IMG/VR virus record: IMGVR_UViG_3300023174_000045
Coordinates: 1 to 64,000 of that record
Length of the DNA stretch: 64,000 bases
Reading direction: 5' to 3' (one strand)
Of this stretch, positions 14,048 to 61,237 are shown one piece after another. Position 1 is the first letter of the stretch. Each line of letters begins with the position of its first letter. The notes beneath the pieces were generated by a model. It saw only the letters and a list, made by a program, of their open reading frames with translations. It was not told where the DNA came from and did not search any database. A program made the translations under genes and the position numbers.

Positions 14048-15745
14048 ATGGTGGATCACCGATTTCGCATATTGATCTATCATGCTGGCGGTGCAAACTC
14101 TTGGTTATATCCGGCAGTATTGCATTTAAAAACATATATTGATGTAACTTATCCTGAGCTGGCCGATCAACTTGAATGGTTAATTCCTATTCAACAAACA
14201 ATGACCAACTCAGAATTGTTGGACTATATCCATCAACATGAACCAGATGCGCTTTGCACCAGTCATTACATATGGAATCATGAATATCTAATCAATCAAC
14301 TTAGTCAAATTAGATCACAGTTGCCTGAACACATCAAAGTCATTGCTGGTGGCCCTAGCATCGACGTCAATCTTGACCCAGACTTCTTCAGCAAACATTC
14401 TTATATTGATTACGCTGTATACGGCGCAGGTGAACATGCATTTGCAGACATTATCAAAAGTTTAGTTAATAAAACACCATTGGTTGCATTTAATACATCC
14501 AATTGTGGTTGGATCAATCACAAAACTGGCTTTCCTATTGTGGCAGAGTACAAATTTGTAAAAATGATCAGCACCAGTCCCTTTACTCACAATCGAGAAT
14601 TATTTGCCGAAATGACTCGTACTTTGCTGGAACGCAATGGATCATTGCACTTGCCTTATACGTTGACCAGGGGGTGTCCGTACTCGTGTACCTTTTGTGA
14701 TTGGAACAGTGGGTTAGGAAACAAACTGTCAAGACGAAAAAATACCTATCAAGAAGAAATTGATTTGTTTCACGAATTAGGTATCAAACAAATTTATTTG
14801 TCTGACGCCAATGTTGGACAGTATGATGAAGATGTTGCTATGATAGAATATTTTGCACAAAAAAATCTGCAACACAATGCTGGATTCAAAATCAGCGGCA
14901 ACTATAGCAAACTGCGCAAAGATGTGAATTTAAAAATCTTCAACATCATGGCCGAAAGTGGATTGGTGAAAAAAACATTGAATTTTTCCATACAAGATAC
15001 CAACGAACAGATATTAAAAAATATCGATCGGCCAGATGTTGGATGGGAGACTCACGCTGCCATGGCCAACGAGCTTGTGACCAAGCATCCGCAATTGACT
15101 GTAAAAGCACAATTGATTTATGGCTTGCCTGGACAAACGCCGTCGACCTGGCGGCACACACTGCGCCAGGTCACTGAGGAAAACATACTGCCTATTGTGT
15201 TTTTAAATGAACCATTGCCGGCCAGCCCTGCCATGTACGATCCCGAATACCAACGTCAATTTCAATTTGAGTACGTAAAGTCCACACGTATTACGTATGA
15301 TACTGATTTTTATATTAGTGAAATTCCAAAAAAATGTATATCTTTTGATCAACGACAATTGGTAGAAATGACAGTGTTATCTGGAGTCTACTATGCCTTG
15401 AGTACAATAAAGTTTTTAATGATTCGACAGGCAGAGTTACATATAAACATCGAACCAATAGTTGATAATTTTTTAATCAGTTCTCAATATCACGATTCTT
15501 GTGAAAATCTTTACACCAACTGGTCTACTAAACAAAAATTCTATTTTACAAGAAATTTTTCGGGTAATCCTGTTATGTTATCTTGTGATCCTATGTCATA
15601 TGGTAGTGCGTTAGTTGTTGACAATAATTTCATTGCGTACATTGCAAAATTGCTGCCACACGATGTATCAAAAAAACTCATGCAATTAACACTGCAAGAT
15701 AATCTTAAAGATATTGTGGCCAACTTGTCCAGCGAAATTGATTAG
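14048..15745 (+). CDS. cobalamin-binding radical SAM protein (class B methyltransferase-like)
   Basis: N-terminal B12-binding-like region (IAGGP, GAGE), TRGCPYSCTFC, LIYGLPGQT. Confidence 0.8.
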   Translation: MVDHRFRILIYHAGGANSWLYPAVLHLKTYIDVTYPELADQLEWLIPIQQTMTNSELLDYIHQHEPDALCTSHYIWNHEYLINQLSQIRSQLPEHIKVIAGGPSIDVNLDPDFFSKHSYIDYAVYGAGEHAFADIIKSLVNKTPLVAFNTSNCGWINHKTGFPIVAEYKFVKMISTSPFTHNRELFAEMTRTLLERNGSLHLPYTLTRGCPYSCTFCDWNSGLGNKLSRRKNTYQEEIDLFHELGIKQIYLSDANVGQYDEDVAMIEYFAQKNLQHNAGFKISGNYSKLRKDVNLKIFNIMAESGLVKKTLNFSIQDTNEQILKNIDRPDVGWETHAAMANELVTKHPQLTVKAQLIYGLPGQTPSTWRHTLRQVTEENILPIVFLNEPLPASPAMYDPEYQRQFQFEYVKSTRITYDTDFYISEIPKKCISFDQRQLVEMTVLSGVYYALSTIKFLMIRQAELHINIEPIVDNFLISSQYHDSCENLYTNWSTKQKFYFTRNFSGNPVMLSCDPMSYGSALVVDNNFIAYIAKLLPHDVSKKLMQLTLQDNLKDIVANLSSEID

Positions 15746-36343: not shown

Positions 36344-36655
36344 ATGGCACACAGCGATACCCGCACACGAATCAAACCATCAGAGGCCGTAATAGAGCCG
36401 CCTATGTTTAAAGTTATCTACTTGAACGATAACCAAACCACAATGGAATTTGTTGTGGACAGCCTGGTCGAATATTTTGACTACACACCGGCCACTGCCG
36501 AACAAATCACCATAGACATTCATCAAGCAGGACAAGCCACAGTGGCAGTGTTGCCTTACGAAGTTGCCGAACAAAAAGGCATCGAAGTCACAATCAGCGC
36601 AAGATCACAAAGTTTTCCACTGCAAATCAAGCTGGAACCTGAAACTGTAAATTAA
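36344..36655 (+). CDS. clpS: Clp adaptor ClpS
   Basis: FKVIYLNDNQTTMEFVV, IHQAG, FPLQI. Confidence 0.9.
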   Translation: MAHSDTRTRIKPSEAVIEPPMFKVIYLNDNQTTMEFVVDSLVEYFDYTPATAEQITIDIHQAGQATVAVLPYEVAEQKGIEVTISARSQSFPLQIKLEPETVN

Positions 36656-37440
36656 TCGTCTACAACAATGCGCAAGGGATGGTATACATGTTGTTTCCAC
36701 TCAGTATCACCTCGACCTCTGCAGTTGTTGACAAACCGCACACCTTGACGTATTTGATCCACTGATCCATGATAGTGACCAAAACACCAGGTGTGCAATT
36801 TCTTCTCTGTGTCTGCACTCAAGGCCTGCATCATAAAACTGTTGCCCATGGTATTGAATCTTAGAGTTTCTGCCAATCCGATGTCGTGTGCAACCAAACT
36901 TGCATTGGGCACCGTGTGCGTGACACACACAATCTTGTTGACGTCATTGTGAGTTTGCAGACGTTTCACACTGCCAATCATGTAAGTACTGTCGGTTCGG
37001 GCCATGCGTCCCACAGTTTTGGCCACGGTGCCGTTGACCTTGGCATAATCTTGAAACCAAAGCGATGACTGCTCTGCATCAATACTGAGATCGAAATCAT
37101 AAGTCCACCAACCATTTGTGCCTATGATTGCTACCCCGTCAACCACTGCAACATTGTCTTGCAAGTATACCACATTGGGTATTCTTCTTATTTTTTTAGC
37201 AAGATCTGCATAACTGCTGTTTAAATCGTTAAGATAATATCTGTGTTCGTCATTGCCGTCTACGTAAAACACCGCCTGATAACATTGTCCAAGATGCCTT
37301 AACGAATCAACAACCACTGTGCGGTCACGTGCAATATCACCAGCTACAACGCAATAAGGACTGGTGGCCAGGCCTGACCAATCAAATCCGGGCCAGGTTT
37401 CAGTGTGTAAATCAGAAATTAAATCAAACGCAAAACTCAT
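36652..37440 (-). CDS. calcineurin-like metallophosphoesterase
   Basis: SDLH, GDI, GNDEH, THTVP, FGHYH. Confidence 0.85.
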   Translation of the reverse strand: MSFAFDLISDLHTETWPGFDWSGLATSPYCVVAGDIARDRTVVVDSLRHLGQCYQAVFYVDGNDEHRYYLNDLNSSYADLAKKIRRIPNVVYLQDNVAVVDGVAIIGTNGWWTYDFDLSIDAEQSSLWFQDYAKVNGTVAKTVGRMARTDSTYMIGSVKRLQTHNDVNKIVCVTHTVPNASLVAHDIGLAETLRFNTMGNSFMMQALSADTEKKLHTWCFGHYHGSVDQIRQGVRFVNNCRGRGDTEWKQHVYHPLRIVVDD

Positions 37441-37464: not shown

Positions 37465-37821
37465 ATGAACATTATATTTGGAGACGCATTAGATAAACTG
37501 CCAGACAACTATACAGTGTTGGAATTAGATACATTTGTATTTCCTCCCAACAGCGACAAACGCACCAGTTATTGTGTGATTGAAAAAGTTCCGCTTACTG
37601 ACTTCCCTTTGATGGAGGCATACATCAAAGTTCACACTGACATGATGCAGGCCTATAGAGATCAAAATTGGGAGTATTGTCTGCATGCCATCAAAGGGCT
37701 GATAGGACATTGGAATGGAGAGTTAGACAGTTTTTATTCTAACTTGTTGCAACGTGTGGAAAAATATCAAGCCAATCCACCAGGTGACTACTGGACTGGC
37801 TACATCGACAAGACGGTTTAA
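37465..37821 (+). CDS. protein resembling the C-terminal helical tail of class III adenylate/guanylate cyclases
   Basis: AYRDQNW...RVEKY..NPP..WTG pattern; no catalytic cyclase domain. Confidence 0.5.
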   Translation: MNIIFGDALDKLPDNYTVLELDTFVFPPNSDKRTSYCVIEKVPLTDFPLMEAYIKVHTDMMQAYRDQNWEYCLHAIKGLIGHWNGELDSFYSNLLQRVEKYQANPPGDYWTGYIDKTV

Positions 37822-38108
37822 ATTTCAGGTTTGCTTGAAGTTTCGCCGGCACCCAACACGCAGGCCATGCTGGCGTCATATTCAATCATGGTCCATGATC
37901 GTTTTTCCCGGTTGACCAACAGTGTGATATGTGTGCCTGTGTTGGTTTTGCCCACCCATAATGGTGTTTCTTGAAAGTTAATTGAAAAATAACTCATCAC
38001 GCTTTGTGCGTCAGAACATTTGATCTGCTTTTGCATGTCGACAATTTGTTGGGCGTGGGCTATAGAGCTGATTAGGCAGAATAACAACGCCACTGCTGTG
38101 TTTTTCAT
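37818..38108 (-). CDS. small secreted protein
   Basis: Signal peptide MKNTAVALLFCLISSIAHA; TAAATA plus SD. Confidence 0.7.
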   Translation of the reverse strand: MKNTAVALLFCLISSIAHAQQIVDMQKQIKCSDAQSVMSYFSINFQETPLWVGKTNTGTHITLLVNREKRSWTMIEYDASMACVLGAGETSSKPEI

Positions 38109-38133: not shown

Positions 38134-39132
38134 TTACACAACAGGTACCAGATTGTCTCTAAAAATTTCCCATGCTGTTTGCCATGACCAGCGTTGACTG
38201 CCGTCCCACACACGATGTCTGGGCAAGAACAAGCAATCGGTGACAGCTTGTTTCAAGTAAGGATTCATGCATCCTGTGATGCCTTCGTCTATGACATCCA
38301 GTGGTCCTGTAGCAGGATAAGCAGCCACTGGAGTTCCGCAGGCCATGGCTTCAATCATCACAATGCCAAATGTTTCCCACTGACTGGGAAACACAAATAC
38401 ATCTGCTAGGTTGTAGTAGTAGGCTAGATCAGCACCAGTTTTGAATCCCACATACTCTACGTCTGGATAACGTGATTGCAATTCTGCACGATACGGTCCA
38501 TCGCCTACCAAAATCTTGCGTGAGTTGGGATAGCTCATGCCGCAGAAATCATCCAAGTTCTTTTCTTTGCTGACTCTGCTGACACACACCAAGACAGTCT
38601 TATCATTGGGCAAGCGTTCTCTGGGATAAAATATTTCACGGTCTACACCGCGAGTCCATGGCACAATGTCGCCGTCAAATCCATGCTCACGTAACTCTTG
38701 CACCATAGTTTCGGTTGTAGTCAACACCTTACCGCTATGCTTATGAAACCAACGCACTAGAGGCCAAGTAATGGCTTCAGGTATGCCAAACAGTTTTCTA
38801 AGTCCTTCTGGAAATTTAGTATGATAAGCAGTGTTGTAGCGATAATGATGTTTGTCAAGATATTGTCTAACACGCAGACCAACAGGACCTTCTGTGGCGA
38901 TGTGGATATGATCCGGACGGATCTCCTCAAGTATCGCGCCCACATTCCGGGGAATGGCAATCTTGACTTGGTGGTAGCCAGGGCAATCAAAGTAGCGGAA
39001 CCGCCCGGGATCAAGATATACAACACGATAGTTGTCCAGAATCGCATGCGCCTCAATATTTTTATAGGTTGTAACCACGCCATTGATTTGATCCGGTAAG
39101 TTGTCTGTAACGATCAAGATTGTTTTTGACAT
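38134..39132 (-). CDS. agt: GT4 glycosyltransferase, Agt-like diacylglycerol glycosyl/glucuronosyltransferase
   Basis: ILIVTD...QINGVVTT, PDHIHIATEGPVG, TAYHTKFPE, RVSKEKN, ETFGIVMIEAMACG; downstream of plcP-like gene. Confidence 0.78.
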   Translation of the reverse strand: MSKTILIVTDNLPDQINGVVTTYKNIEAHAILDNYRVVYLDPGRFRYFDCPGYHQVKIAIPRNVGAILEEIRPDHIHIATEGPVGLRVRQYLDKHHYRYNTAYHTKFPEGLRKLFGIPEAITWPLVRWFHKHSGKVLTTTETMVQELREHGFDGDIVPWTRGVDREIFYPRERLPNDKTVLVCVSRVSKEKNLDDFCGMSYPNSRKILVGDGPYRAELQSRYPDVEYVGFKTGADLAYYYNLADVFVFPSQWETFGIVMIEAMACGTPVAAYPATGPLDVIDEGITGCMNPYLKQAVTDCLFLPRHRVWDGSQRWSWQTAWEIFRDNLVPVV

Positions 39133-39287
39133 TGCCCTGTTACCTTGAATGTTTTAAACTTTAAATCATATTTCATAGTCGCCAGCACCTGCTCGCAACT
39201 GATTTGATTTGGGAAAACTAATTCTATTCTTCCGGGTTGATCTTGCGGGTTCGTTGTGTGTACTGCTATCAATATCATCAACCACAT
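39114..39287 (-). CDS. 57-aa hypothetical protein nested in the plcP 3' extension (not in ORF track)
   Basis: MWLMILIAVHTTNPQDQPGRIELVFPNQISCEQVLATMKYDLKFKTFKVTGQCQKQS; overlaps the agt start. Confidence 0.55.
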   Translation of the reverse strand: MWLMILIAVHTTNPQDQPGRIELVFPNQISCEQVLATMKYDLKFKTFKVTGQCQKQS

Positions 39288-40038
39288 TGTCGCTCTCCTG
39301 TGTCCAAGTTACAATTTCCCATGTGCCATCATGCCGCTCTACCAAGGCTGTGCATGACTCTACCCAGTCACCGTCATTCATGTACACAATGCCATCTATA
39401 TCTTTGATTTCTGCGTGATGTATGTGTCCACAGATCACACCGTCAAATCCACGTTTCTTGCAGTATTGAGCAAGATTGTGTTCAAAGTGAAATATAAAGT
39501 CTACTGCTTTTTTGACCCGATGTTTAAGGAACAGGCTAAGGCTAAAGTACCCAAAACCGAAACGATGACGAATCCAATTGATCCGAGTATTGAGGCCAAG
39601 AATGAAATCATATGCTTTGTCTCCTAACATTGCCAACCACGGCGCCAGTCTAGTAATACCGTCAAATAAATCTCCATGCACTACTAGATAGTGTCGGCCG
39701 TCTGCACCTATATGCTCTGTTTGATTTACCAATTCAATTATGCCAAACCCAATGCCATAGTGCATGAAAGGTCTTAAAAACTCGTCATGATTACCAGCCA
39801 CATATACAACCCTAGTACCACGCTTGCTATGGCCCAGAACGCGGCGGATGACATTGGTGTGACTTTGTTTCCATCGCCACTTGTTTTGTTTGATTTTCCA
39901 GGCATCTATTATGTCTCCTACAAGATATAGTGTTTCGCAGGTGTTGTGTTTGAGAAAGTTGTTGAGTTTGTCAGCCTGGCAGTCTTTGGTGCCAAGATGA
40001 ACATCGCTGATAAAAATACTGCGATAAGTTTTTTGCAT
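39166..40038 (-). CDS. plcP: PlcP-type Mn-dependent phospholipase C (LpxH-like metallophosphoesterase)
   Basis: SDVHLG, GDIID, GNHD (not LpxH GNRD), HGD, GHIHH, NDGDWVES; membrane-binding insert LAMLGDKAY...FSLS. Confidence 0.82.
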   Translation of the reverse strand: MQKTYRSIFISDVHLGTKDCQADKLNNFLKHNTCETLYLVGDIIDAWKIKQNKWRWKQSHTNVIRRVLGHSKRGTRVVYVAGNHDEFLRPFMHYGIGFGIIELVNQTEHIGADGRHYLVVHGDLFDGITRLAPWLAMLGDKAYDFILGLNTRINWIRHRFGFGYFSLSLFLKHRVKKAVDFIFHFEHNLAQYCKKRGFDGVICGHIHHAEIKDIDGIVYMNDGDWVESCTALVERHDGTWEIVTWTQESDNVVDDIDSSTHNEPARSTRKNRISFPKSNQLRAGAGDYEI

Positions 40039-40060
40039 GTATTATTTAAATCTATATGTG

Positions 40061-40078
40061 TTACAGTAACATTACAAA
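40061..40078 (-). promoter_or_regulatory. Pho box upstream of plcP-agt
   Basis: TTGTAAT-GTTA-CTGTAAC vs consensus CTGTCAT-N4-CTGTCAY; followed by N9-TTTAAATAAT. Confidence 0.75.
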
Positions 40079-40122
40079 CTGCCATCACATAAATGTGTAA
40101 TATGTTGGCACATAAATACCCA

Positions 40123-40764
40123 GTGAAACCCACCATAGCCCTGTTCATATACGATCCCAAATGCTCAGTCCAATGCGGAAATGGCATGATACAGGCATTG
40201 AGTCCCTACTACAACTTCAAACTGTTCTCAAAGAATCGTGTGGAGAATGTGTTCTTTGATGATGTGGACATGGTTGCTGTGCCCGGGGGCATAGGTGACG
40301 CAGATGTCTTTAAACAACTGTTCAAAAATAATGGCGACCGTGTGCGTAAATTTATTGCTGACGGGGGCAGGTACCTGGGCATTTGCATGGGTGCGTACTG
40401 GGCAGGAAGCCACTATCTCAATGTATTACAAGATGTAGATGCTGTGCAATACTTGAAACGTCCAGGTGCAGACACACGCAGACCGCATGCCAAAAACATG
40501 TCTATTACCTGGCGCGGCCGACCTGATCACATGTTCTGGTATGATGGATGTGCTCTAGTAGGAGACAACACCAAGTTTGAAACTGTGTCAACTTATGTCA
40601 ACGGTGATGCCATGGCCATCATACAAAACAGAATTGGTTTGATAGGATGTCATCCTGAAGCAGATAAATTTTGGTATGATGGCTATTCCTGGATGCGCCG
40701 ACATTGGACCGGTAATCGTCATGCAGAACTGGTAGAGTTTACCGACCAAATCATGCGGTCATAA
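40123..40764 (+). CDS. class I glutamine amidotransferase-like / BPL_N-like protein
   Basis: VPGG.GD, YLGICMGAY nucleophile elbow, GCHPE; GTG 4 nt after TAAATA. Confidence 0.7.
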   Translation: MKPTIALFIYDPKCSVQCGNGMIQALSPYYNFKLFSKNRVENVFFDDVDMVAVPGGIGDADVFKQLFKNNGDRVRKFIADGGRYLGICMGAYWAGSHYLNVLQDVDAVQYLKRPGADTRRPHAKNMSITWRGRPDHMFWYDGCALVGDNTKFETVSTYVNGDAMAIIQNRIGLIGCHPEADKFWYDGYSWMRRHWTGNRHAELVEFTDQIMRS

Positions 40765-40787
40765 AAAAAAGGCCCTTCTGGGCCTTT
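40763..40787. terminator. intrinsic terminator between convergent genes
   Basis: AAAGGCCC-TTCT-GGGCCTTT with flanking A-run. Confidence 0.75.
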
Positions 40788-40839
40788 AGTACTGGTTACG
40801 AGTTCCAGTGCCGCTCTATCGTTGCGGTCGATTTTTCTA

Positions 40840-41976
40840 TTAGAAGCGATGTTGGATACCAACTGCCACAGCATTCTGCTTGTATTTGCTGTCGCTGAAA
40901 GTTGATGTGTCCTGGCTGGGAACCCAACGATCATACACAGTAAACGGAGCAGTAGCACCTGATGCACGAGTTGCAACCACATAGTCGGCAAACACTTGTG
41001 TGCGCTTGCTGAAATCATAAGTCACGCCAACAGCAGTCATTTTGACATTGTTAATGCCAGCAGTGACTTTGTCTTTGACCATGTAGTAACCGCCATTTAC
41101 GCCAAGATTGGCATTGACTTTGTACTTGGCGCCAACAAATGTTGTTTCAGCATCAGTCTTGCCATCGGCCTTGGTTGAGCTGGCATAGTAGTTGGTTTGT
41201 GCTGTGGGATTGTCAGTCTTAGCATAGCCTGCATTTACAGTTAATGCAGGCGTAACATCATATTTCACAGCATACAAATCAATCTTTTCACTGATAACTG
41301 AACTGCTCAAACGCACTTCTTCGTGTGTGTATGCCAAGTCCAACGGGCCTGCGGTGTAACGAACACCTACGTTGGTACCAGATTTATAAGCAGTGTCATC
41401 GGGCTGGTTGCCAAATGCTTTGGCGTAGTCAAACTTGAAACCGCTGTAGTCTTTGCTGGACCAGCGAACCATGTTGTCAAAGCGGCTCACACCTGAACCT
41501 GAGTAGAAACCAGCATAACGAGCAATGGGTTTCATACCACCAAAGTTCCAGTTGCCACGGCTATCAAATTCATCTAGCACGTTGTACAAAAAGTTTTTGC
41601 CACGACCCAATTTGACTTCACCAAAGCTGCCGCTGAGGCCCACATTGGCTTCGCGGTCAAACAACACAGTACCATTGGTGCCTGTGCCTGCTGAGTCTTT
41701 GCCAGCAGCGCCAGTGCGCAAACTCATGTTGCCTTCCAATTGGAAATTGGCTTTCAAACCATCACCAAGGTCTTCTGAACCTTTGATACCAAAGCGATTG
41801 CTGTTGTGAGCTTGGTCTGCAACACCAGTGAAATCACTGTTACTGCTGGTAAAGCCACTGCCACTGACAATGCCAGCGCCAACCACACCATACACTTGTG
41901 TGTTGTTTTGTGCTTGAGCAGTGCCAGCAACGCCGACAGCAACCAATGCCGCAATTAAAATATTCTTAAATTTCAT
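40840..41976 (-). CDS. outer-membrane porin (Betaproteobacterial general porin family)
   Basis: Signal peptide; SNRFGIKGSEDLGDGLKANFQLE, LFDREANVGLSG.FG...GR; C-terminal Phe. Confidence 0.9.
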   Translation of the reverse strand: MKFKNILIAALVAVGVAGTAQAQNNTQVYGVVGAGIVSGSGFTSSNSDFTGVADQAHNSNRFGIKGSEDLGDGLKANFQLEGNMSLRTGAAGKDSAGTGTNGTVLFDREANVGLSGSFGEVKLGRGKNFLYNVLDEFDSRGNWNFGGMKPIARYAGFYSGSGVSRFDNMVRWSSKDYSGFKFDYAKAFGNQPDDTAYKSGTNVGVRYTAGPLDLAYTHEEVRLSSSVISEKIDLYAVKYDVTPALTVNAGYAKTDNPTAQTNYYASSTKADGKTDAETTFVGAKYKVNANLGVNGGYYMVKDKVTAGINNVKMTAVGVTYDFSKRTQVFADYVVATRASGATAPFTVYDRWVPSQDTSTFSDSKYKQNAVAVGIQHRF

Positions 41977-42006
41977 AGTTTCTCCTTTGTAAATTACTAT
42001 GGGTTT

Positions 42007-42035
42007 ATTATATAGTATTTCTACTAACAATACAA
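42007..42035 (-). promoter_or_regulatory. sigma70 promoter for porin
   Basis: TTGTAT-N17-TATAAT. Confidence 0.7.
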
Positions 42036-43052
42036 CTATTTCTTGACCTGTGTCCAAACTTCGCTACGAATGCGATCCGTAACAGCTTTTGGCAATGGCA
42101 CATAGTCAAGATCTGCAGCCATTTTACCACCGTTTACAAAACTCCAGTCAAAGAATTTGATGACTTCTTGACCAGTCTTTGCATTTTTGGGTTCACGATA
42201 CATCAGCACAAACACAGCACCTGTGATGGGCCATGATTGCGCACCCTTTTGATTTACCAAACTGATGCCCATGCCCGGAACACTGAACCAATCAGCACCG
42301 GCAGCCGCTGCCGCAAATGTCAGATCATCGGGCTCGACCCATTTGCCGTCGCGATTTTGCAAACGTGCATAGCTGATTTTGTTTTTCTTGGCATAAGCAT
42401 ATTCTACGTAGCCAATGGAATTTTTGATACGTGTTACATTGGCAGCAACACCTTCATTGCCTTTGCCGCCCACACTGCTGGTGGCAGGCCATTTCACAGC
42501 GGCGCCTTTGCCAACTTCGTCTTTCCACAGTGGGCTGACTTCAGTCAAGTAGTCTGTGAAAATAAATGTTGTACCTGACCCATCCGCACGATGCACCACT
42601 GTGATGGGTTCGGCAGGCAATTTAACCTTGGGGTTCAAGTCTTGGATACGCTTGTCGTTCCACGTCACAATGTGTCCCACAAAGATCTTGGCCAGTACTT
42701 CACCGGTCAACTGCAACTCGCCAGGTTTGATGCCTTCTACATTGATGATTGGCACCACGCCGCCCAGCACAGCAGGAAACTGGATCAAGCCAGCGGCTGT
42801 TAATTCATCACCTTTCATGGGTGCATCACTGGCACCAAAATCCACTGTACCTGCTTTGATTTGCTTGATGCCGCCGGAACTACCAATGCTTTGATAGTTT
42901 AGTTGCACATCAGATTTTTCTCTGTAAGCTTCTGACCATTTAGAGAACATGGGAAAGGCAAATGTTGAACCTGCCCCTGTGATTGTTTCTGCATTTGCTT
43001 GTGGACTCATCAAGTACAATGATGCCGCAATTATTACCAAGATTTTTTTCAT
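42036..43052 (-). CDS. pstS: phosphate ABC transporter substrate-binding protein PstS
   Basis: GAGSTF, YQSIGSSGG, DFGASD, RADGSGTT, IGYVE, WPI. Confidence 0.95.
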   Translation of the reverse strand: MKKILVIIAASLYLMSPQANAETITGAGSTFAFPMFSKWSEAYREKSDVQLNYQSIGSSGGIKQIKAGTVDFGASDAPMKGDELTAAGLIQFPAVLGGVVPIINVEGIKPGELQLTGEVLAKIFVGHIVTWNDKRIQDLNPKVKLPAEPITVVHRADGSGTTFIFTDYLTEVSPLWKDEVGKGAAVKWPATSSVGGKGNEGVAANVTRIKNSIGYVEYAYAKKNKISYARLQNRDGKWVEPDDLTFAAAAAGADWFSVPGMGISLVNQKGAQSWPITGAVFVLMYREPKNAKTGQEVIKFFDWSFVNGGKMAADLDYVPLPKAVTDRIRSEVWTQVKK

Positions 43053-43104
43053 GTGTTTGTTCCTTTGTGAATGTGCGATGCACAAATTATTTAAACACAA
43101 AGAT

Positions 43105-43122
43105 GTTACAGTAGTATTACAG
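43105..43122 (-). promoter_or_regulatory. Pho box upstream of pstS
   Basis: CTGTAAT-ACTA-CTGTAAC; followed by N9-TTTAAATAAT, same geometry as at plcP. Confidence 0.82.
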
Positions 43123-43269
43123 TGATTTGACTTTTTTCTTCTTTTTGTCTGGGCCAGAGGCTTTGGCTTCTTCCAGCATGCGTTCTGTAGCTGGGGTATT
43201 TTGGGGAGGATGATATACGTGGGGTTTTTGGGGTTCGTTTCGTCGCGGTGCTCGTTTAAACCAACTCAT
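43117..43269 (-). CDS. 50-aa basic hypothetical protein (not in ORF track)
   Basis: MSWFKRAPRRNEPQKPHVYHPPQNTPATERMLEEAKASGPDKKKKKVKSL; SD AAGGAAG; stop lies inside the Pho box. Confidence 0.6.
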   Translation of the reverse strand: MSWFKRAPRRNEPQKPHVYHPPQNTPATERMLEEAKASGPDKKKKKVKSL

Positions 43270-43329: not shown

Positions 43330-44565
43330 TTATTTTTTGAGCAGTATCTCATGAATTTTTCTTAGATGTTTCCCAGTTCGATTTTGATCCATAATAGTCA
43401 TGGCATGATCTAAATTTGTTTTGTATTCTTGTATTACTTGATCAAAAAACTTGTTAAAAAAATGTTGTCGATTGTGTTGGCAAATTCTGTCAAGATCAAT
43501 CATGAGTTGTTGTTTTGTTGATGTGTCAAGTTGGCTGATTCTTTGCATTTCTTTAACTATGGCCTGTAATCTCAAGTGCGGCTCAGTTATTGAATCATAT
43601 GACTCATTGATATAGTCTGAGAATGTTTCAAAACCATAGTTTCTAAGATATTGCAAACTGCCTGGAGTGGCTGCCAATATAAAAGGTTTGCCACAGGCAA
43701 TGGGCCTTAAAGTTTTTTCTGTGAGATGCCACCGTTGATCATCAAACACAGTTTCTAATACTATTTCAATGGCTGACTCGCTGTAGTCCGTTGAGTTGTA
43801 ATCCGCACTGTATGAACTGTCAGTGGTGTTGCTTGGCAAATAGGTGTGTAAGTCAACACTGGTTATGCGTAAATTGTTGTTGACAAAGGCATGATTACGA
43901 TAGTCTACTTGATTGTCAGTGATACTAAAGCTGGTATTTGCACAGGTTTGCAGTCCATGATTGCACAACAGTTCAGTAAAAAACAAACGATATTCTCTAG
44001 TGCCACTCCATGCTCGATTATAAATTAAAAAATCTTTTTTTATTTTATGCCAGCTGAAACCAAGACTTGGATCATGCTCAGCATATCTAAACCAATCTTG
44101 AGAGATCACAGCATGGCTCCAGTAGTAAACAGGTACAAATCCATGTTTGGCAAATACCTCAACATTGGCGCTGTTTTGTTCTGAGTGCAACAACAATGTG
44201 AGATCGTATTGATTGATACAAGCTGTGAGTGATCGCAAATATTGATCGGCAGTGTATTCAAGCACTGCATCATCAGTTAACCAATCAGGATTGTAGCCTT
44301 CTATTCTGGTGGCACTATTTTGATTCAAATAGTTGTTTTTGGTTTGAGTTTTGATTTGTTCTCTGGTGTAGTAGTTCCAAATCAAGGGTTCTTGATCATG
44401 GCAGATCATTGGTGCATCAGTCACCGTTTGCCGCCCAAAATAAATGGTCAGTTGATTTAAATCTTCAAGTTTTCTTGAGCCGTGTGGCGCCCAGCGATAA
44501 ATTATTAGATCGTGGTTGACAATGTCCGCCAAGTAATGATATAATCTGTCTAAGGGAACGCTCAT
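43330..44565 (-). CDS. putative glycosyltransferase-like protein
   Basis: HDQEP, YNR..SG.REYR, IVLET...HLTEKTLRPI...PFI...L..YGFETF...ESYD. Confidence 0.55.
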   Translation of the reverse strand: MSVPLDRLYHYLADIVNHDLIIYRWAPHGSRKLEDLNQLTIYFGRQTVTDAPMICHDQEPLIWNYYTREQIKTQTKNNYLNQNSATRIEGYNPDWLTDDAVLEYTADQYLRSLTACINQYDLTLLLHSEQNSANVEVFAKHGFVPVYYWSHAVISQDWFRYAEHDPSLGFSWHKIKKDFLIYNRAWSGTREYRLFFTELLCNHGLQTCANTSFSITDNQVDYRNHAFVNNNLRITSVDLHTYLPSNTTDSSYSADYNSTDYSESAIEIVLETVFDDQRWHLTEKTLRPIACGKPFILAATPGSLQYLRNYGFETFSDYINESYDSITEPHLRLQAIVKEMQRISQLDTSTKQQLMIDLDRICQHNRQHFFNKFFDQVIQEYKTNLDHAMTIMDQNRTGKHLRKIHEILLKK

Positions 44566-45819
44566 ATGAAGAAAAAAATTGGGTTTATTGGAATTGGTAA
44601 ATTGGGCCTTGATTGTGCTGAAGTCATGGCCGAAAAACACGAAGTGCGCGGTTACGATATTTACCCACGAGTCAGTAGCTCAGTAAAAGTTTGCGACATT
44701 GATGAACTTGTAAACAAAAGTGAATGGATCTTTATTGCTGTGCCCACACCACATGCCAAAGGTTACGATGGCAGTGCGCCCAGCAGTCATTTAGAACCCA
44801 GAGACTTCGAATATGATGCTGTGATCGATGCCATCAACAACGTGAACAAATACGCCAAAACTTCTAAAAAAGTTGTGTTGATCAGTACTGTGCTGCCAGG
44901 CACCACACGCAAAAAGTTTGTTCCACTGCTAGATAAAAAACATCAGTTCTTGTACAACCCTTATTTGATTGCCATGGGGTCAGTGAAGTGGGACATGGTC
45001 AATCCTGAAATGGTCATGATTGGTACCGAAGACGGCAATCCCAATGCATTGGCTGGCGAGTTGATTGACTTGTACAAAACCATGATGCAAAACGATCCAC
45101 GTTATGAAATTGGCACCTGGGATGAGTGTGAAGCCATCAAGATCTTCTACAACACATTCATTTCAGCCAAGATTGGTCTTGTTAACATGGTTCAAGACTT
45201 TGCACTCAAAATTGGCAACATCAATGTTGATGTGGTCACTGACGCTCTCAGCAAGAGTACCATGCGCATCATGGGACCAAAATACATGACAGCAGGCATG
45301 GGCGATGCAGGTGCTTGTCATCCCCGAGACAACATTGCCCTGCGCTGGTTGGCCAAGGAATACAAAATTGGTTACGACTTGTTTGACACTGTGATGACTG
45401 CTAGAGAAGCACAAGCCAAGAACATGGCACTGTTTTTGATATATCATGCAAACAATCATGCAGTGGGAAAAGTTTTGCCCATTGTGATTCACGGCAAAGC
45501 GTACAAACCTGACGTTGAATACTGCATTGGATCCTACAGCACATTGGTAGGCCATACCATCAAAGAAATGGGTTATCATCTCATGTATGTGGATCCATTG
45601 GCTGATGACAGAACTGATGTGGTTGACTTAGTAGGCGTGCCAGCAGTTTATTTGTGGGCGCACAATCGCAAGATCACTTATGACTACACCGGTGATCAAG
45701 AAGAAACCACAGCCTATTGTCACATACTGCCGGGCAGTGTGATTGTTGATCCATGGCGCACACTTGAGCCAATCGAAGGCATTGATGTAATTCATTATGG
45801 TGACACACGCGGTTGTTAA
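44566..45819 (+). CDS. ugd: UDP-glucose/GDP-mannose 6-dehydrogenase
   Basis: GIGKLG Rossmann, AVPTP, ISTVLPGT, YNP, EAIKIFYNTF, G.GDAGACHPRD. Confidence 0.88.
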   Translation: MKKKIGFIGIGKLGLDCAEVMAEKHEVRGYDIYPRVSSSVKVCDIDELVNKSEWIFIAVPTPHAKGYDGSAPSSHLEPRDFEYDAVIDAINNVNKYAKTSKKVVLISTVLPGTTRKKFVPLLDKKHQFLYNPYLIAMGSVKWDMVNPEMVMIGTEDGNPNALAGELIDLYKTMMQNDPRYEIGTWDECEAIKIFYNTFISAKIGLVNMVQDFALKIGNINVDVVTDALSKSTMRIMGPKYMTAGMGDAGACHPRDNIALRWLAKEYKIGYDLFDTVMTAREAQAKNMALFLIYHANNHAVGKVLPIVIHGKAYKPDVEYCIGSYSTLVGHTIKEMGYHLMYVDPLADDRTDVVDLVGVPAVYLWAHNRKITYDYTGDQEETTAYCHILPGSVIVDPWRTLEPIEGIDVIHYGDTRGC

Positions 45820-54777: not shown

Positions 54778-55250
54778 TCTATGGGCCAGATCCAGCCCAT
54801 GTTTTCCAGTTGATGTATCCAGGAAAACACAGGAGCATCAAACTTCAACTGCCATCTGCCATTCCACCCCAGATGTGTTTCCCCGGCTTGAACAGGATTC
54901 GGTCGGGGATTTTGCTGACTGTACCAGGGTTCAGGAAACACAGGCTCATACGTGGCCAGCCAGTTAAAACGCGGCAAGTGTATGCCATTGATTCGCACAG
55001 CACCAATGGTGATGTATTTGTCCAAGCCCTGATCAGGCACACAGTCAGCATCAGTTTTGTTCAGCAGATCCACAAACACTGAATGTGTCCCAGGTGTTAG
55101 ATCAAATGCAAATCTCAAGGTACACAGTTGACTCAAGGTAATGTGATTGATCACTGTGTTGTCATGACCATATGCAATACGTGGAGCATCCTGATGATAC
55201 GTGGGAACAACATCTATTTCAATGTCAGTTTGATATTTTTTCATATCCAT
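54774..55250 (-). CDS. hypothetical protein coupled to radical SAM gene
   Basis: Overlaps the radical SAM stop. Confidence 0.65.
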
Positions 55251-56586
55251 ATTGATCTAAAAAGTTGCCCCATTCAGGATAGTAATCTTTGGCATTGAGA
55301 TTGCACAATTTATCCCATTTGTTTAACCAACCAACCAGTTCTACTTTGAGTGCTTCGGCATTGGGCAATTCGGGAATCTGAATCATTTTGTACACACTGT
55401 TGAGTTCATTGTAGAGATTCAGTGCATTCTTTCCGTGCTCTCTTGACTGCGGCATGTCTGGATGTTGGTCTTGTTTGATATATTCAGCCAACTTGCTCAA
55501 CACACGCTCGTATTCAGCAAAGTAACTTTGTCTGATCGTCAAGGGCAATGCAGCCGCACGTAAGTATGCAGGATTCCAACAAGTATTGTTTTCTGTCACA
55601 ATGTTGTTGTCAAACATCCATTCAGTCAGGGCAGGGAATGTAGGCACTGTGAGTGCTGTGATGGTAGGTTTCAAACACACGCAGAATGTTTCACTTTGGT
55701 GCGACAAGAACGAACGAATGTTGTTCCAATACAGTTCTTTGTCTAGTCCTTGGCGAATGTAGAAGTTGTTGTCAGACACAGACTCAATGCTGATGTCGAT
55801 GTCTGCACGGAAGAATTTGGCAAACTTTTCAGCAATCTCCCGGCTGTATATGGTGCCATTGGTGATCAGGCTCACAGCAAAGTCAGTGCGGTTGTTTTGA
55901 ATAAAGAAATCCAAGAACTCTTCCAGTTTTGGACTCATAAAAGGCTCGCCGCCCATGAAGTGAACACTGCGTAGGTTCTTCATGCCCAGCAGTTCATTCA
56001 GGAACCGTTGCCAAACTTCTTCGTCGTCCATCCAGTTCATTCTGGTATGGTAATCTTCTTTGCTGAGTATGCCCCAGATTTTGTATTTGGTTGCAATCTG
56101 TGTGCTGTAACTGGGATTGCAATGTTTGCAGTAGAGATTGCATTCGTTGCCCATGTCAATGTGCAGGTCCACAGGCATGCCATCATAGTGTTCATCCAGG
56201 GCCTGGCCAGATTGCTCGCTGACAAACACATCATGGTGTGGACTTTGTTCAAAACTTTGCTGGAAGTTTTGCTGTGTGAATATCACACTGCGCCAATTTT
56301 GTGTGTTGCGATAACTGTCGTTGCCATACTGCTCGTCTTGATAGCAACCGGCACATTCGGCCAAGGGTTGATCGGCCAGCATGGACTCACGGTATCGTTT
56401 CATCTTTTCACCACGGTACCAGTCACGAATGCTGGTGGTTTTGATATTGGGTTTGATTGATTCGGGTTGTTTTGCGTAGCCATCAAACACCGGCGCTCGC
56501 TCACTGCAACACAGTCCATAACTACCGTCATGGTAAAGTTGCATGTGGAACCAAGGCACATTACAGAATATTTTGGGATTTGGCAT
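55225..56586 (-). CDS. radical SAM protein with N-terminal SPASM/twitch-like domain
   Basis: CNVPW..GLCC..CAGC; CNLYCKHC; FMGGEPF. Confidence 0.88.
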   Translation of the reverse strand: MPNPKIFCNVPWFHMQLYHDGSYGLCCSERAPVFDGYAKQPESIKPNIKTTSIRDWYRGEKMKRYRESMLADQPLAECAGCYQDEQYGNDSYRNTQNWRSVIFTQQNFQQSFEQSPHHDVFVSEQSGQALDEHYDGMPVDLHIDMGNECNLYCKHCNPSYSTQIATKYKIWGILSKEDYHTRMNWMDDEEVWQRFLNELLGMKNLRSVHFMGGEPFMSPKLEEFLDFFIQNNRTDFAVSLITNGTIYSREIAEKFAKFFRADIDISIESVSDNNFYIRQGLDKELYWNNIRSFLSHQSETFCVCLKPTITALTVPTFPALTEWMFDNNIVTENNTCWNPAYLRAAALPLTIRQSYFAEYERVLSKLAEYIKQDQHPDMPQSREHGKNALNLYNELNSVYKMIQIPELPNAEALKVELVGWLNKWDKLCNLNAKDYYPEWGNFLDQYGYEKISN

Positions 56587-60024: not shown

Positions 60025-60432
60025 ATGACAGACATAGGACAGTTTCTCATGGAATTCGGTGACTTTTTAATTTGGTTTGGACTGATATACTTTGCAGTTA
60101 CCATAGCATTTGGCCTGCTGGAAGCCTGGTTGATACACCGGTTTTCTCAAGAACTCACTGAAGAATTGTCTTCAGTGGGGCAGGCCTTGGATGAAGAACG
60201 GCTGATTGCACTCACAGTGGAACACGAGCATGATCAATATTTCTGTTATAATAGTGTCACCAACGACTTTGTTTGTCAAGGGCGTGATTTGAAGGAAATA
60301 CGTGAACGGTTTCGTGAGAGGTATCCCAACAAGGATGCGGCCATTTATGATGGTGACAAGACAGCAGTGGCCACGCTGAAATCGCAACTCAAAGAATTAA
60401 AGAAACAAAATGAAAATAGCATTGGTATCTGA
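60025..60432 (+). CDS. N-terminally membrane-anchored hypothetical protein
   Basis: TM helix followed by E.....YCY...TN.FVCQG. Confidence 0.7.
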   Translation: MTDIGQFLMEFGDFLIWFGLIYFAVTIAFGLLEAWLIHRFSQELTEELSSVGQALDEERLIALTVEHEHDQYFCYNSVTNDFVCQGRDLKEIRERFRERYPNKDAAIYDGDKTAVATLKSQLKELKKQNENSIGI

Positions 60433-61237
60433 CGTACACCTAGAGTTTGGTGACCTAGACTTTGACAACGACAGCGGCGCTGACGTCCTAATCCTGGGTG
60501 GTGACATTTGCATTGCCAACGATATGACGCAACGTGATCTTTACAACACCATGGGTGAAGAATATCGCAGTAACCGATTTCATGCGTTCTTCCAACGATG
60601 CAGTGAGAGATTTCCGCATGTGATTTTCATTGTGGGCAATCACGAACACTATCATGGTGACTTTGCCAAGACTGTGCCGCACTTCAAAGATGTCCTGAGA
60701 TATTTGCCCAACTTGCACATACTTGAAAAAGAAACTTTTGTGCTGGATGACATCACATTCATTGGTGGCACATTATGGACTGACATGAATAAGCGTAGTG
60801 TTCGTACCTTGCATGAGATTTCACGCATGATGAATGATTTTCGTTGTGTAGACAATACGGCCAAAGACAATGATCAATGGGGCAGTCGGTTTACCACCAC
60901 AGATGCTGCCAATGACCATGATGCCATGTTGGCATTTGTTCGAACCACTGTGGAGTCCAATCCTGCCGGACGCTATGTTGTGGTAGGGCATCATGCACCC
61001 AGCAGGCTCAGCACCCATCCAAAATATGCCCATGAGGCCATAATGAATGGTGGGTACAGTAGTGAACTGGATGACTTTATTTTGGATCACCCACAGATCA
61101 AGTTATGGACACACGGGCACACGCACGAGGACTTTGACTACCGAATTGGGTCATGTCGAATCTTGTGCAACCCAAGAGGTTATGTCAACTATGAAGAAAG
61201 GGCAGATACATGGCGCCTGGTCACAGTGGAAGTATAA
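60410..61237 (+). CDS. calcineurin-like metallophosphoesterase
   Basis: SDVHLE, GGDI, GNHEHY, GHHAP, HGHTH, NPRGY. Confidence 0.9.
   Translation: MKIALVSDVHLEFGDLDFDNDSGADVLILGGDICIANDMTQRDLYNTMGEEYRSNRFHAFFQRCSERFPHVIFIVGNHEHYHGDFAKTVPHFKDVLRYLPNLHILEKETFVLDDITFIGGTLWTDMNKRSVRTLHEISRMMNDFRCVDNTAKDNDQWGSRFTTTDAANDHDAMLAFVRTTVESNPAGRYVVVGHHAPSRLSTHPKYAHEAIMNGGYSSELDDFILDHPQIKLWTHGHTHEDFDYRIGSCRILCNPRGYVNYEERADTWRLVTVEV

What the first reader, a model, noticed from the sequence alone, without database searches (positions are those of the whole stretch)
38134..43122. Phage-encoded phospholipid-to-glycolipid remodelling module (plcP + agt) inside a Pho-regulated phosphate island
Seen in sequence: co-oriented genes for a metallophosphoesterase (SDVHLG/GNHD/GHIHH/NDGDWVES) and a GT4 enzyme (HIATEGP/TAYHTKFPE), with a Pho box upstream. 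They lie beside a porin and a Pho-boxed pstS. Established: in Rhizobiaceae, SAR11 and roseobacters the PhoB-controlled PlcP + Agt pair cleaves head groups from PE/PG and rebuilds the diacylglycerol into P-free glucosyl/glucuronosyl lipids. Inference: the phage mines host membrane phosphate for its own DNA synthesis while keeping the envelope intact, and imports extra Pi via porin/PstS. It may also change the cell surface. Phage pstS is well known; I am not aware of a characterised phage plcP-agt lipid-remodelling system, but cannot check the literature here.
Basis: partly seen in the sequence, partly recalled or inferred. Interest (0 to 1): 0.92.

Follow-up and report, generated by a model that had tools for sequence, protein, structure and literature searches.

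The report
Phage-borne membrane lipid remodelling genes
A large freshwater phage carries close copies of the two bacterial enzymes that swap phosphorus-containing membrane lipids for sugar lipids, next to a phosphate-uptake operon with the same starvation-type promoter. This suggests the virus taps the host membrane for phosphorus.

Summary
On the minus strand lie a PlcP-type metallophosphoesterase (39166-40038) and an Agt-type GT4 glycosyltransferase (38134-39132). They are 56% (E 7e-97) and 38% (E 2e-74) identical to the characterised Pseudomonas aeruginosa PlcP/Agt1 pair. Identity to E. coli LpxH is only 24%, over the N-terminal 120 residues.

An identical 17-nt tandem Pho-box-like site, followed by the same -10-like element, precedes plcP and a pstS-porin operon. 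It occurs nowhere else in the 64 kb.

The contig is a 225-kb IMG/VR jumbo-phage contig. 481 viral contigs carry the plcP homologue. In 75 of 77 fetched loci with enough downstream DNA, a glycosyltransferase follows it directly (45 GT4, 30 GT2). dN/dS is 0.02-0.11.

The cultured Pelagibacter phage Mosig also has a plcP homologue beside pstS, annotated as an LpxH-type hydrolase.

One departure: the window's Agt has Glu where characterised Agt/GTcp enzymes have a catalytic Asp.

The enzyme activities, PhoB control and the "phosphorus mining" purpose are inferred, not shown. No paper in the searchable library describes phage-encoded PlcP/Agt. Verdict: real, a new phage member of a known pathway, and moderately to highly interesting.

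The parts
40041..40076 (-). Pho-box-like promoter of the plcP operon. It has tandem half-sites TGTAAT/CTGTAAC 11 bp apart (40060-40076), then 10 nt, then the -10-like TTAAATAAT ending 2 nt before the plcP ATG. This implies a leaderless or near-leaderless mRNA.
39166..40038 (-). plcP: a PlcP-type phospholipase C of the metallophosphoesterase family, 290 aa. Metal-binding motifs are DVH12-14, GD41-42, GNHD82-85, HGD121-123 and GHIHH204-208.
38134..39132 (-). agt-like GT4 glycosyltransferase, 332 aa, predicted to glycosylate diacylglycerol. It has H104, G82/G85, T160-R161, SRVSKEKN, FPSQWETFG (E253 in place of the GTcp Asp256) and W320.
37818..38108 (-). Small secreted or periplasmic protein (96 aa, signal peptide) 26 nt downstream of agt. 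It is syntenic in related phages and of unknown function.
40123..40764 (+). Class I glutamine-amidotransferase-like protein, divergent from plcP. It has an invariant Cys98-His187-Glu189 triad (numbering from the 40093 start) and is a frequent neighbour of plcP in related phages. Its role is unknown.
40768..40787 (.). Palindromic intrinsic terminator (8-bp stem, 5 G-C pairs, T tract) between the convergent porin and amidotransferase-like genes. It ends the pstS-porin operon.
40840..41976 (-). General (GBP/Porin_4) outer-membrane porin, 378 aa, with a signal peptide and a C-terminal Phe. It is co-transcribed with pstS.
42036..43052 (-). pstS: periplasmic phosphate-binding protein, 338 aa, with a signal peptide.
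43086..43121 (-). Pho-box-like promoter of the pstS-porin operon. It has the same 17-mer half-site pair and -10-like element as at plcP, followed by a roughly 30-nt leader with an AAGGA ribosome-binding site.
43117..43269 (-). Small ORF (50 aa, lysine-rich C-terminus) whose stop codon lies inside the pstS Pho-box-like site. Its peptide is conserved in the closest related phages.
43330..44565 (-). Unknown 411-aa protein that forms a conserved divergent pair with the sugar dehydrogenase gene. There is a weak hint of a GT-B glycosyltransferase fold.
44566..45819 (+). UDP-glucose 6-dehydrogenase-like enzyme, a possible source of UDP-glucuronate. It has its own 12/12 sigma-70 consensus promoter at 44516-44545 and no Pho box.

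Best explanation
This is a phosphate-stress island of a freshwater jumbo phage, built from two operons with the same Pho-box-like promoter.

Operon 1 is plcP, agt and a small secreted protein. Its predicted action is as follows. PlcP cuts the phospho-head group off host phospholipids (PE, PG or PC), leaving diacylglycerol. The Agt-like GT4 then transfers a hexose or uronic acid from a UDP-sugar to that diacylglycerol. The bilayer is thereby refilled with phosphorus-free glycolipid.

Operon 2 is pstS and a porin. It is predicted to raise phosphate capture across the outer membrane and periplasm.

In a phosphate-starved infected cell the host PhoB would switch both operons on. This would free lipid phosphorus and import extra phosphate for replication of a 225-kb genome.

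Shown here: homology to characterised enzymes, intact catalytic motifs, near-universal plcP-glycosyltransferase linkage in related phages, the shared promoter motif, purifying selection and phage origin.

Inferred: the substrates and products, PhoB control, and the benefit to the phage.
For: PlcP identity:
- 56% identity over 247 aa (E 7e-97) to the P. aeruginosa PA3219 orthologue. That protein is itself only 46-47% identical to the other validated PlcPs.
- 59% identity to the Hirschia maritima DSM 19733 homologue, a genome listed as PlcP-containing by Sebastian et al..
- Only 24% identity over 120 aa to E. coli LpxH. PDB LpxH gives E 1e-4, and NCBIfam LpxH gives 44 bits against a cutoff of 134.

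Agt identity:
- 38% identity over 329 aa (E 2e-74) to Agt1/PA3218.
- It shares the GTcp functional residues H104, G82/G85, T-R, the R/K of the EKN motif, TFG, E261 and W320.
- Cellular homologues at 37-43% identity sit directly downstream of plcP homologues.

Linkage and selection:
- 75 of 77 viral plcP loci have a glycosyltransferase directly downstream (45 GT4, 30 GT2).
- dN/dS is 0.02-0.11.

Regulation:
- There are two exact copies of the promoter motif, at plcP and at pstS only.
- The motif is conserved upstream of both genes in relatives.
- Cellular plcP homologues carry canonical CTGTCAT/GTCAC-type boxes.

Phage origin:
- The window comes from an IMG/VR contig of 225 kb.
- The window also encodes primase, DnaB, RNR, ligase, ClpXP and UvdE genes.
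- The helicase is 48% identical to that of the jumbo phage PA5oct.
- The same flanking genes recur in independent contigs.
Against: - No activity was measured.
- The window's Agt has Glu253 where GTcp has Asp256, and the D256E mutant of GTcp lost more than 90% of its activity. However, Glu is fixed across a diversified viral clade and is the GT4 norm.
- The half-sites read TGTAAY rather than TGTCAY, so the binding protein could be something other than PhoB.
- The -10-like element ends 2 nt before the plcP ATG, which requires a leaderless mRNA.
- The module has no identified phosphatase to release phosphate from the cleaved head groups. The two other phosphoesterases in the window (36652-37440 and 60410-61237) are uncharacterised.
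- The UDP-glucose dehydrogenase-like gene has a consensus sigma-70 promoter and no Pho box.
- The host is unknown.
Confidence: 0.72

Rival explanations
1. The module acts mainly on the cell surface or membrane properties. The phage changes membrane lipid and porin composition to block superinfection by other phages, or to alter grazing or antibiotic susceptibility. Phosphorus release would be incidental.
For: The island also encodes a porin and a small secreted protein. Papers found in the search report that lipid changes alter phage attachment and predation in bacteria (PMC9938194 and PMC9457565, listed). The D-to-E change in the viral Agt could mean a different sugar lipid.
Against: The promoter is shared with pstS, the archetypal phosphate-starvation gene. 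Glycolipids made by Agt are inner-membrane bulk lipids in the characterised systems. There is no receptor-modifying enzyme signature.
Confidence: 0.15
2. The phosphoesterase is an LpxH-like lipid A enzyme and the GT4 is an LPS or polysaccharide glycosyltransferase, as automatic annotation suggests. The pair would then remodel LPS rather than phospholipids.
For: JGI and GenBank annotations of homologues read 'UDP-2,3-diacylglucosamine pyrophosphatase LpxH'. There are weak NCBIfam and PDB LpxH hits to the N-terminal part.
Against: The LpxH hits lie far below the family cutoff and cover only the N-terminal metal-binding half. Identity to characterised PlcP is 56% full-length. The GT4 shares the diacylglycerol-binding residues of GTcp and 38% identity with Agt1.
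Confidence: 0.04
3. The module is a membrane-damaging or lysis aid. PlcP would degrade the inner membrane late in infection, and the glycosyltransferase would be unrelated to it.
For: A phospholipase C could in principle weaken the membrane.
Against: A glycosyltransferase follows plcP directly in 75 of 77 related loci. The promoter is a starvation-type one shared with pstS. No holin or endolysin lies nearby.
Confidence: 0.04
4. The island is host DNA: a chimeric assembly, or a cellular contig mistaken for a virus.
For: All the genes are of cellular type. A few close homologues sit in MAG bins of unrelated phyla.
Against: The same island with the same phage flanks (ClpX, ligase, UvdE, RNR) recurs in many independent viral contigs from different samples, some up to 359 kb. 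GC content is uniform across the island. The MAG contigs with more than 65% identity carry the same phage genes and come from incompatible phyla, as expected for mis-binned phage contigs.
Confidence: 0.02

Closest known systems
Bacterial PlcP-Agt lipid remodelling pathway (S. meliloti SMc00171; Phaeobacter MED193_17359; Pelagibacter HTCC7211 PB7211_983/PB7211_960 = GTcp; P. aeruginosa PA3219/PA3218/PA0842)
   Same: The gene order is the same, plcP followed directly by a GT4 ('type 2' of Sebastian et al.), with a Pho-box-type site upstream. The window proteins are 56% and 38% identical to P. aeruginosa PlcP and Agt1. The metal-binding, UDP-sugar and diacylglycerol-binding residues are shared.
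   Different: The genes are carried by a lytic-type jumbo phage rather than a cell. The Agt has Glu for the catalytic Asp (FPSQWETFG against FPSxTDTFG). The half-sites are TGTAAY. The module is followed by a small secreted protein and sits beside a pstS-porin operon with the same promoter.
Phosphate auxiliary metabolic genes of cyanophages (pstS, phoA) with host Pho-box control
   Same: A phage-borne pstS lies behind a Pho-box-like site. The logic is the same: host starvation signalling boosts the phosphorus supply for the phage.
   Different: The PstS here is of proteobacterial type (50% identity to enterobacterial PstS, 35% to cyanophage PstS). It is co-transcribed with a porin that has no homologue in deposited phage genomes. 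It is joined by lipid-remodelling genes. That cyanophage pstS is PhoB-controlled is from my own knowledge.
Pelagibacter phage Mosig EXVC030M gene Mosig_00120 (annotated as a putative UDP-2,3-diacylglucosamine hydrolase)
   Same: It is a plcP homologue in a cultured phage. It is 47% identical to the window protein and 47% identical to P. aeruginosa PlcP (E 1e-84). It is placed divergently next to the phage pstS.
   Different: No glycosyltransferase lies next to it. The phage is a 141-kb marine T4-like phage, and the gene is not recognised as PlcP in the genome announcement.
LpxH (UDP-2,3-diacylglucosamine diphosphatase)
   Same: It has the same calcineurin-like fold family and the same metal-binding motifs in the N-terminal half.
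   Different: Identity is only 24% over 120 residues. The hit is far below the NCBIfam cutoff, and the substrate and pathway differ.
E. coli PhoE (a Pho-regulated general porin)
   Same: It is a general trimeric-type porin placed under a phosphate-starvation promoter.
   Different: It belongs to a different porin subfamily (Porin_4, nearest named relative from a Burkholderiaceae MAG at 39%). It is phage-encoded and operonic with pstS. The comparison with PhoE is from my own knowledge.

Membership tests
PlcP (phospholipase C of the lipid-remodelling pathway) | Calcineurin-like metallophosphoesterase with intact metal-binding motifs (DxH, GD, GNHD/E, H, GHxH) | tested here: met
   Pfam Metallophos 3e-10. 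Motifs are at residues 12-14, 41-42, 82-85, 121-123 and 204-208, and are invariant in 12 viral copies.
PlcP (phospholipase C of the lipid-remodelling pathway) | Full-length BLASTP similarity to an experimentally validated PlcP at the threshold used in the literature (E < 1e-40 against MED193 PlcP) | tested here: met
   Tested against the P. aeruginosa PA3219 orthologue instead of MED193, giving 56% identity and E 7e-97.
PlcP (phospholipase C of the lipid-remodelling pathway) | A gene for phosphorus-free lipid synthesis directly downstream | tested here: met
   The GT4 lies 33 nt downstream in the window. 75 of 77 related viral loci have a GT4 or GT2 directly downstream.
PlcP (phospholipase C of the lipid-remodelling pathway) | Pho box upstream and induction by phosphate starvation | tested here: inconclusive
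   A tandem 11-bp-phased TGTAAT/CTGTAAC site is shared with pstS. It deviates from CTGTCAT at one position. Induction is not testable here.
PlcP (phospholipase C of the lipid-remodelling pathway) | Releases diacylglycerol from PE, PG or PC | not testable with these tools
   Needs an enzyme assay or lipidomics.
Agt/GTcp clade of GT4 diacylglycerol glycosyltransferases | GT4 (GT-B) domain, about 330-350 aa, with 35-58% identity to characterised members and under 25% to other GT4s | tested here: met
   332 aa with Pfam GT4 domains. 38% identity and E 2e-74 to P. aeruginosa Agt1. The best PDB GT4 hits reach only E 1e-12, on the C-terminal domain.
Agt/GTcp clade of GT4 diacylglycerol glycosyltransferases | Catalytic dyad His104-Asp256 (Asp in place of the usual GT4 Glu), within the FPSxTDTFG motif | tested here: not met
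   His104 is present, but position 253 is Glu (FPSQWETFG). 31 of 42 viral copies have WE and 11 have D. The change arose once in the viral clade. I therefore file it as an Agt-like relative, a viral sister clade, and not as a canonical member.
Agt/GTcp clade of GT4 diacylglycerol glycosyltransferases | UDP-sugar motif GRVAxEKN and diacylglycerol-binding residues Thr162, Arg163, Trp320 | tested here: met
   SRVSKEKN (R186, K191), T160-R161 and W320 are present.
Agt/GTcp clade of GT4 diacylglycerol glycosyltransferases | Makes glucosyl- or glucuronosyl-diacylglycerol | not testable with these tools
   Needs heterologous expression and lipid mass spectrometry.
LpxH | Score above the curated NCBIfam equivalog cutoff, with a full-length match | tested here: not met
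   44.5 bits against a cutoff of 134, covering residues 6-124 only. 24% identity to E. coli LpxH.
PstS | Score above the NCBIfam equivalog cutoff, plus a signal peptide | tested here: met
   402.8 bits against a cutoff of 339. The N-terminal signal sequence is seen in the translation.
Tailed jumbo phage genome | Phage replication genes, relatives among cultured jumbo phages, and recurrence in viral contigs | tested here: met
   No major capsid or terminase gene lies inside this 64-kb window, so virion genes were not checked.

The most novel reading that the evidence does not exclude
Lipid remodelling is a widespread, previously unrecognised class of phage auxiliary metabolism. Large freshwater phages and at least one cultured pelagiphage would actively convert host phospholipid into glycolipid under host PhoB control. 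This would supply a substantial share of the phosphorus needed for their large genomes. The Glu-variant Agt and the alternative GT2 partner would make virus-specific glycolipids that mark infected cells.
Probability: 0.4. Interest if true: 0.8.

Novelty: new member of a known kind. Interest (0 to 1): 0.62.

Why it matters
Phage replication in phosphorus-poor lakes and oceans is limited by phosphorus. Known phage answers are phosphate uptake (pstS) and ester hydrolysis (phoA). A phage-encoded PlcP-glycosyltransferase pair would add a third route, which is recycling the host's own membrane phosphorus.

The pair is common, being found in 481 IMG/VR contigs. It is under strong purifying selection. 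It is nearly always mis-annotated as LpxH, so it is invisible in current surveys of auxiliary genes.

It would mean that glycolipid signals used as markers of bacterial phosphorus stress are partly virus-driven. It also gives a testable system, because the cultured Pelagibacter phage Mosig carries a plcP homologue next to pstS.

Tried and rejected
- The search for homologous proteins with the whole phosphoesterase timed out twice. A regional search returned only metagenomic near-copies with automatic LpxH names.
- blastn of the island against deposited phages found nothing.
- NCBIfam has no PlcP or Agt model, so naming by profile was not possible.
- A literature search with virome terms was swamped by unrelated papers. 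Searches joining plcP with phage, virus or auxiliary-gene terms, and one on LpxH with pstS, found no report of a phage-encoded PlcP.
- The JBC 2026 PlcP paper gave no active-site information.
- A canonical Pho-box-like site at 60025-60042(-) (1 mismatch) was rejected as functional. It overlaps the start of a plus-strand ORF and faces no credible minus-strand gene. A relaxed hit at 60244-60260 lies inside a coding region.
- The fold of the 411-aa neighbour was poor (pLDDT 63). Foldseek gave no significant match, only weak GT-B glycosyltransferase hits at E 0.04 or worse.
- Host assignment from the porin reached only 'Burkholderiaceae-like'. One named MAG homologue has 39% identity, and the cellular contigs fetched carry no taxon name.
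- There are no tRNA genes in the window.
- One dN/dS pair (GT4 against L008) was discarded because an indel shifts the ungapped comparison.


Full report
**What is there.** Between 37.8 and 45.8 kb the window carries a compact set of cellular-type genes.

On the minus strand, in order of transcription:
- an unknown 411-aa protein (44565-43330)
- a 50-aa ORF (43269-43117)
- pstS (43052-42036)
- a general porin (41976-40840)
- after a convergent plus-strand gene, a metallophosphoesterase (40038-39166)
- a GT4 glycosyltransferase (39132-38134)
- a 96-aa protein with a signal peptide (38108-37818)

On the plus strand:
- a class I glutamine-amidotransferase-like gene (40123-40764)
- a UDP-glucose-dehydrogenase-like gene (44566-45819)

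A strong palindromic terminator (40768-40787) closes the pstS-porin unit.

**It is a phage.** The window matches IMG/VR contig UViG_3300023174_000045, which is 225 kb. The rest of the window encodes a Toprim primase, a DnaB-like helicase, both ribonucleotide reductase subunits, an ATP-dependent ligase, ClpX, ClpP, UvdE and several radical-SAM proteins. The helicase is 48% identical to that of the Pseudomonas jumbo phage PA5oct and 46% identical to that of Agrobacterium phage Atu_ph07. GC content is even across the island. The island recurs with the same flanks (ClpX, ligase, UvdE, RNR) in many independent viral contigs of up to 359 kb. This excludes a chimera or a host fragment. A few contigs with more than 65% identity sit in MAG bins of unrelated phyla but carry the same phage genes. 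I read these as mis-binned phage contigs.

**The phosphoesterase is a PlcP homologue, not LpxH.**
- A PLSDB record of P. aeruginosa holds the plcP-agt1 pair next to cyaB. This matches the description of PA3219/PA3218 in Jones et al. (PMC8528852). That cyaB is PA3217 is from my own knowledge.
- The window protein is 56% identical to this PlcP over 247 residues (E 7e-97). The three validated PlcPs are only 46-47% identical to one another.
- It is 59% identical to the homologue of Hirschia maritima DSM 19733, a genome listed as PlcP-containing in Sebastian et al. (PMC4796936).
- Against E. coli LpxH it shows 24% identity over the N-terminal 120 residues.
- PDB LpxH entries give E 1e-4. The NCBIfam LpxH model gives 44 bits against a cutoff of 134.
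- All metal-binding motifs are intact and invariant among viral copies.
- In a tree of 145 homologues the viral copies form one clade. It lies within a well-supported group (98% SH-aLRT) that also holds the cellular copies followed by an agt-like gene, including Kordiimonas and Caulobacteraceae and Rhodospirillaceae MAGs. The LpxH outgroup branch is saturated, so the root is not reliable.

**The GT4 is Agt-like, with one departure.**
- It is 38% identical (E 2e-74) to P. aeruginosa Agt1. Wei et al. (PMC8231724) report under 25% identity between the Agt/GTcp clade and other GT4 enzymes.
- Of the residues they showed to be essential in GTcp, the window protein has His104, Gly82/Gly85, the Arg and Lys of the GRVAxEKN motif (here SRVSKEKN), Thr-Phe-Gly, Glu261, the diacylglycerol-binding Thr-Arg pair and Trp320.
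- The exception is the catalytic Asp256, which is Glu253 here. The motif reads FPSQWETFG instead of FPSxTDTFG. In GTcp the D256E mutant lost more than 90% of its activity.
- Among 42 viral copies, 31 have the Trp-Glu form and 11 keep Asp. On the GT4 tree the viral copies are monophyletic (99% support), and the change happened once, at the base of a diversified clade. It is therefore a fixed and selected state, not decay. It may alter sugar-donor preference. That last point is inference.

**Linkage and selection.** The search for related loci reported 481 viral contigs that encode a relative of the phosphoesterase. Among the 80 fetched, identity is 76-100%. Of 77 viral loci with enough downstream sequence, 45 have the GT4 directly downstream and 30 have a 240-aa GT2/GT21-type glycosyltransferase instead. 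Only 2 have neither. This mirrors the bacterial arrangements in which plcP is followed by agt or by other lipid glycosyltransferases. It is the strongest contextual argument that the product of the phosphoesterase is a glycosyl acceptor. dN/dS against close relatives is 0.02-0.08 for plcP and 0.04-0.11 for agt.

**Regulation.**
- The string TGTAAT-N4-CTGTAAC-N10-TTAAATAAT occurs exactly twice in the 64 kb on both strands. Both copies are on the minus strand. One is directly upstream of plcP and the other directly upstream of pstS.
- The half-sites are 11 bp apart and lie 10 bp before a -10-like element. This is the geometry of PhoB-dependent promoters (my knowledge). They fit the E. coli-type consensus except for A in place of C in the first half-site.
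- The same arrangement is conserved upstream of plcP and pstS in related phages. Tandem half-sites are present in 25 of 56 distinct upstream regions, against 0.0017 expected.
- Cellular plcP homologues carry canonical CTGTCAT/GTCAC boxes.
- At pstS the promoter is followed by a roughly 30-nt leader with a ribosome-binding site.
- At plcP the ATG follows the -10-like element by 2 nt, so the mRNA would be leaderless. This is unexplained.
- Some related phages have a different conserved element (CGGTCAC-N9-GGTGAC...) upstream of plcP.
- The dehydrogenase-like gene has a 12/12 sigma-70 promoter and no such box.

**Mechanism proposed.** In a phosphate-starved host, active PhoB turns on both phage operons. 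PlcP removes phospho-head groups from phospholipids. The Agt-like enzyme refills the bilayer with glycosyl-diacylglycerol. PstS and the porin raise phosphate capture. The freed head groups would need host phosphatases. A 225-kb genome needs about 450,000 phosphorus atoms per copy, so membrane phosphorus is a meaningful reserve. That estimate is arithmetic from the contig length, and the size of the lipid pool is general knowledge. The identities, linkage, promoter sharing and selection are shown here. The substrates, the regulator and the benefit are inferred.

**Rivals.** A surface-modification or superinfection-exclusion role cannot be excluded. It could coexist with phosphorus recycling. 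The LpxH/LPS reading, a lysis role and host contamination are each contradicted by specific results. See the rival list.

**Comparison and novelty.**
- The enzyme pair is the known bacterial PlcP-Agt pathway, and phage pstS is well known.
- Among 50,697 deposited phage records, only Pelagibacter phage Mosig, Synechococcus phage S-SRM01 (held under two accessions) and two uncultured phage records encode a homologue. All that are annotated are called LpxH-type hydrolases.
- Mosig's copy is 47% identical to P. aeruginosa PlcP and sits next to its pstS. Its genome announcement does not mention it.
- No deposited phage has a close homologue of the GT4 or of the porin.
- All 25 papers in the library that contain both 'plcP' and 'phage' concern other matters.
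- The library lacks most subscription journals, so absence there is not proof of novelty.
- I rate this a new phage member of a known pathway. Two variant features are the Glu-type Agt and the pairing with a pstS-porin operon under one promoter type.

Noticed in passing
window 40123-40764 (+): A stand-alone class I glutamine-amidotransferase-like protein. AF2 pLDDT is 91 and Foldseek TM is about 0.65 to Pdx2/HisH. The Cys98-His187-Glu189 triad is invariant. It lies within 5 kb of plcP in 26 of 48 related loci with full flanks, sometimes directly after agt in the same orientation. No synthase partner is evident and its role is unknown.
   Followed up: partly
L020:10907-11623, L055:8197-8913, L044:901-1608 and 27 other viral loci: Where the GT4 is absent, plcP is followed directly by a roughly 240-aa GT2/GT21-family glycosyltransferase. 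This alternative partner suggests a different glycolipid product in those phages.
   Followed up: partly
window 40840-41976 (-): A phage-encoded general porin (Porin_4) is co-transcribed with pstS. It has no homologue in 50,697 deposited phage records. Viral-type copies are 61-92% identical and cellular relatives 39-56% identical, one of them named as a Burkholderiaceae MAG.
   Followed up: partly
window 43117-43269 (-): A 50-aa ORF with a lysine-rich tail ends inside the pstS Pho-box-like site. Its peptide is conserved in the closest related phages.
   Followed up: no
window 37818-38108 (-): A 96-aa protein with a signal peptide lies 26 nt after agt. It is syntenic in related phages and matches phrog_25396 of unknown function. 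It may be a third member of the operon.
   Followed up: no
window 43330-45819: A divergent, back-to-back pair: an unknown 411-aa protein (weak GT-B hints only) and a UDP-glucose-dehydrogenase-like gene with a perfect sigma-70 promoter at 44516-44545. The pair is conserved next to pstS in the closest phages. It could supply UDP-glucuronate to the Agt.
   Followed up: partly
L028, L033, L035, L052, L055, L057, L063 and others, about 60 nt upstream of plcP: A different conserved upstream element (AATCGGTCAC-N9-GGTGACTCTGGA-N-CCGTAACCAGA) replaces the tandem TGTAAY site in a subset of related phages. It may be another regulator's site or an RNA element.
   Followed up: no
window 36652-37440 (-) and 60410-61237 (+): Two further calcineurin-like phosphoesterases are unrelated in sequence to plcP. 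One matches phrog_1649 at 8e-25 and the other Pfam Metallophos at 5e-8. Their substrates are unknown. They are candidates for head-group or nucleotide phosphatases.
   Followed up: no
window 60025-60042 (-): This is the best match to the textbook Pho box in the window (CTGTCCTATGTCTGTCAT, 1 mismatch). It overlaps the start of a plus-strand ORF and faces no credible gene, so it is probably chance.
   Followed up: yes
window 4004-5083, 14048-15745, 55225-56586: Three radical-SAM proteins, one with a B12-binding domain and one with a SPASM domain, lie in a phage replication region. Their function was not examined.
   Followed up: no
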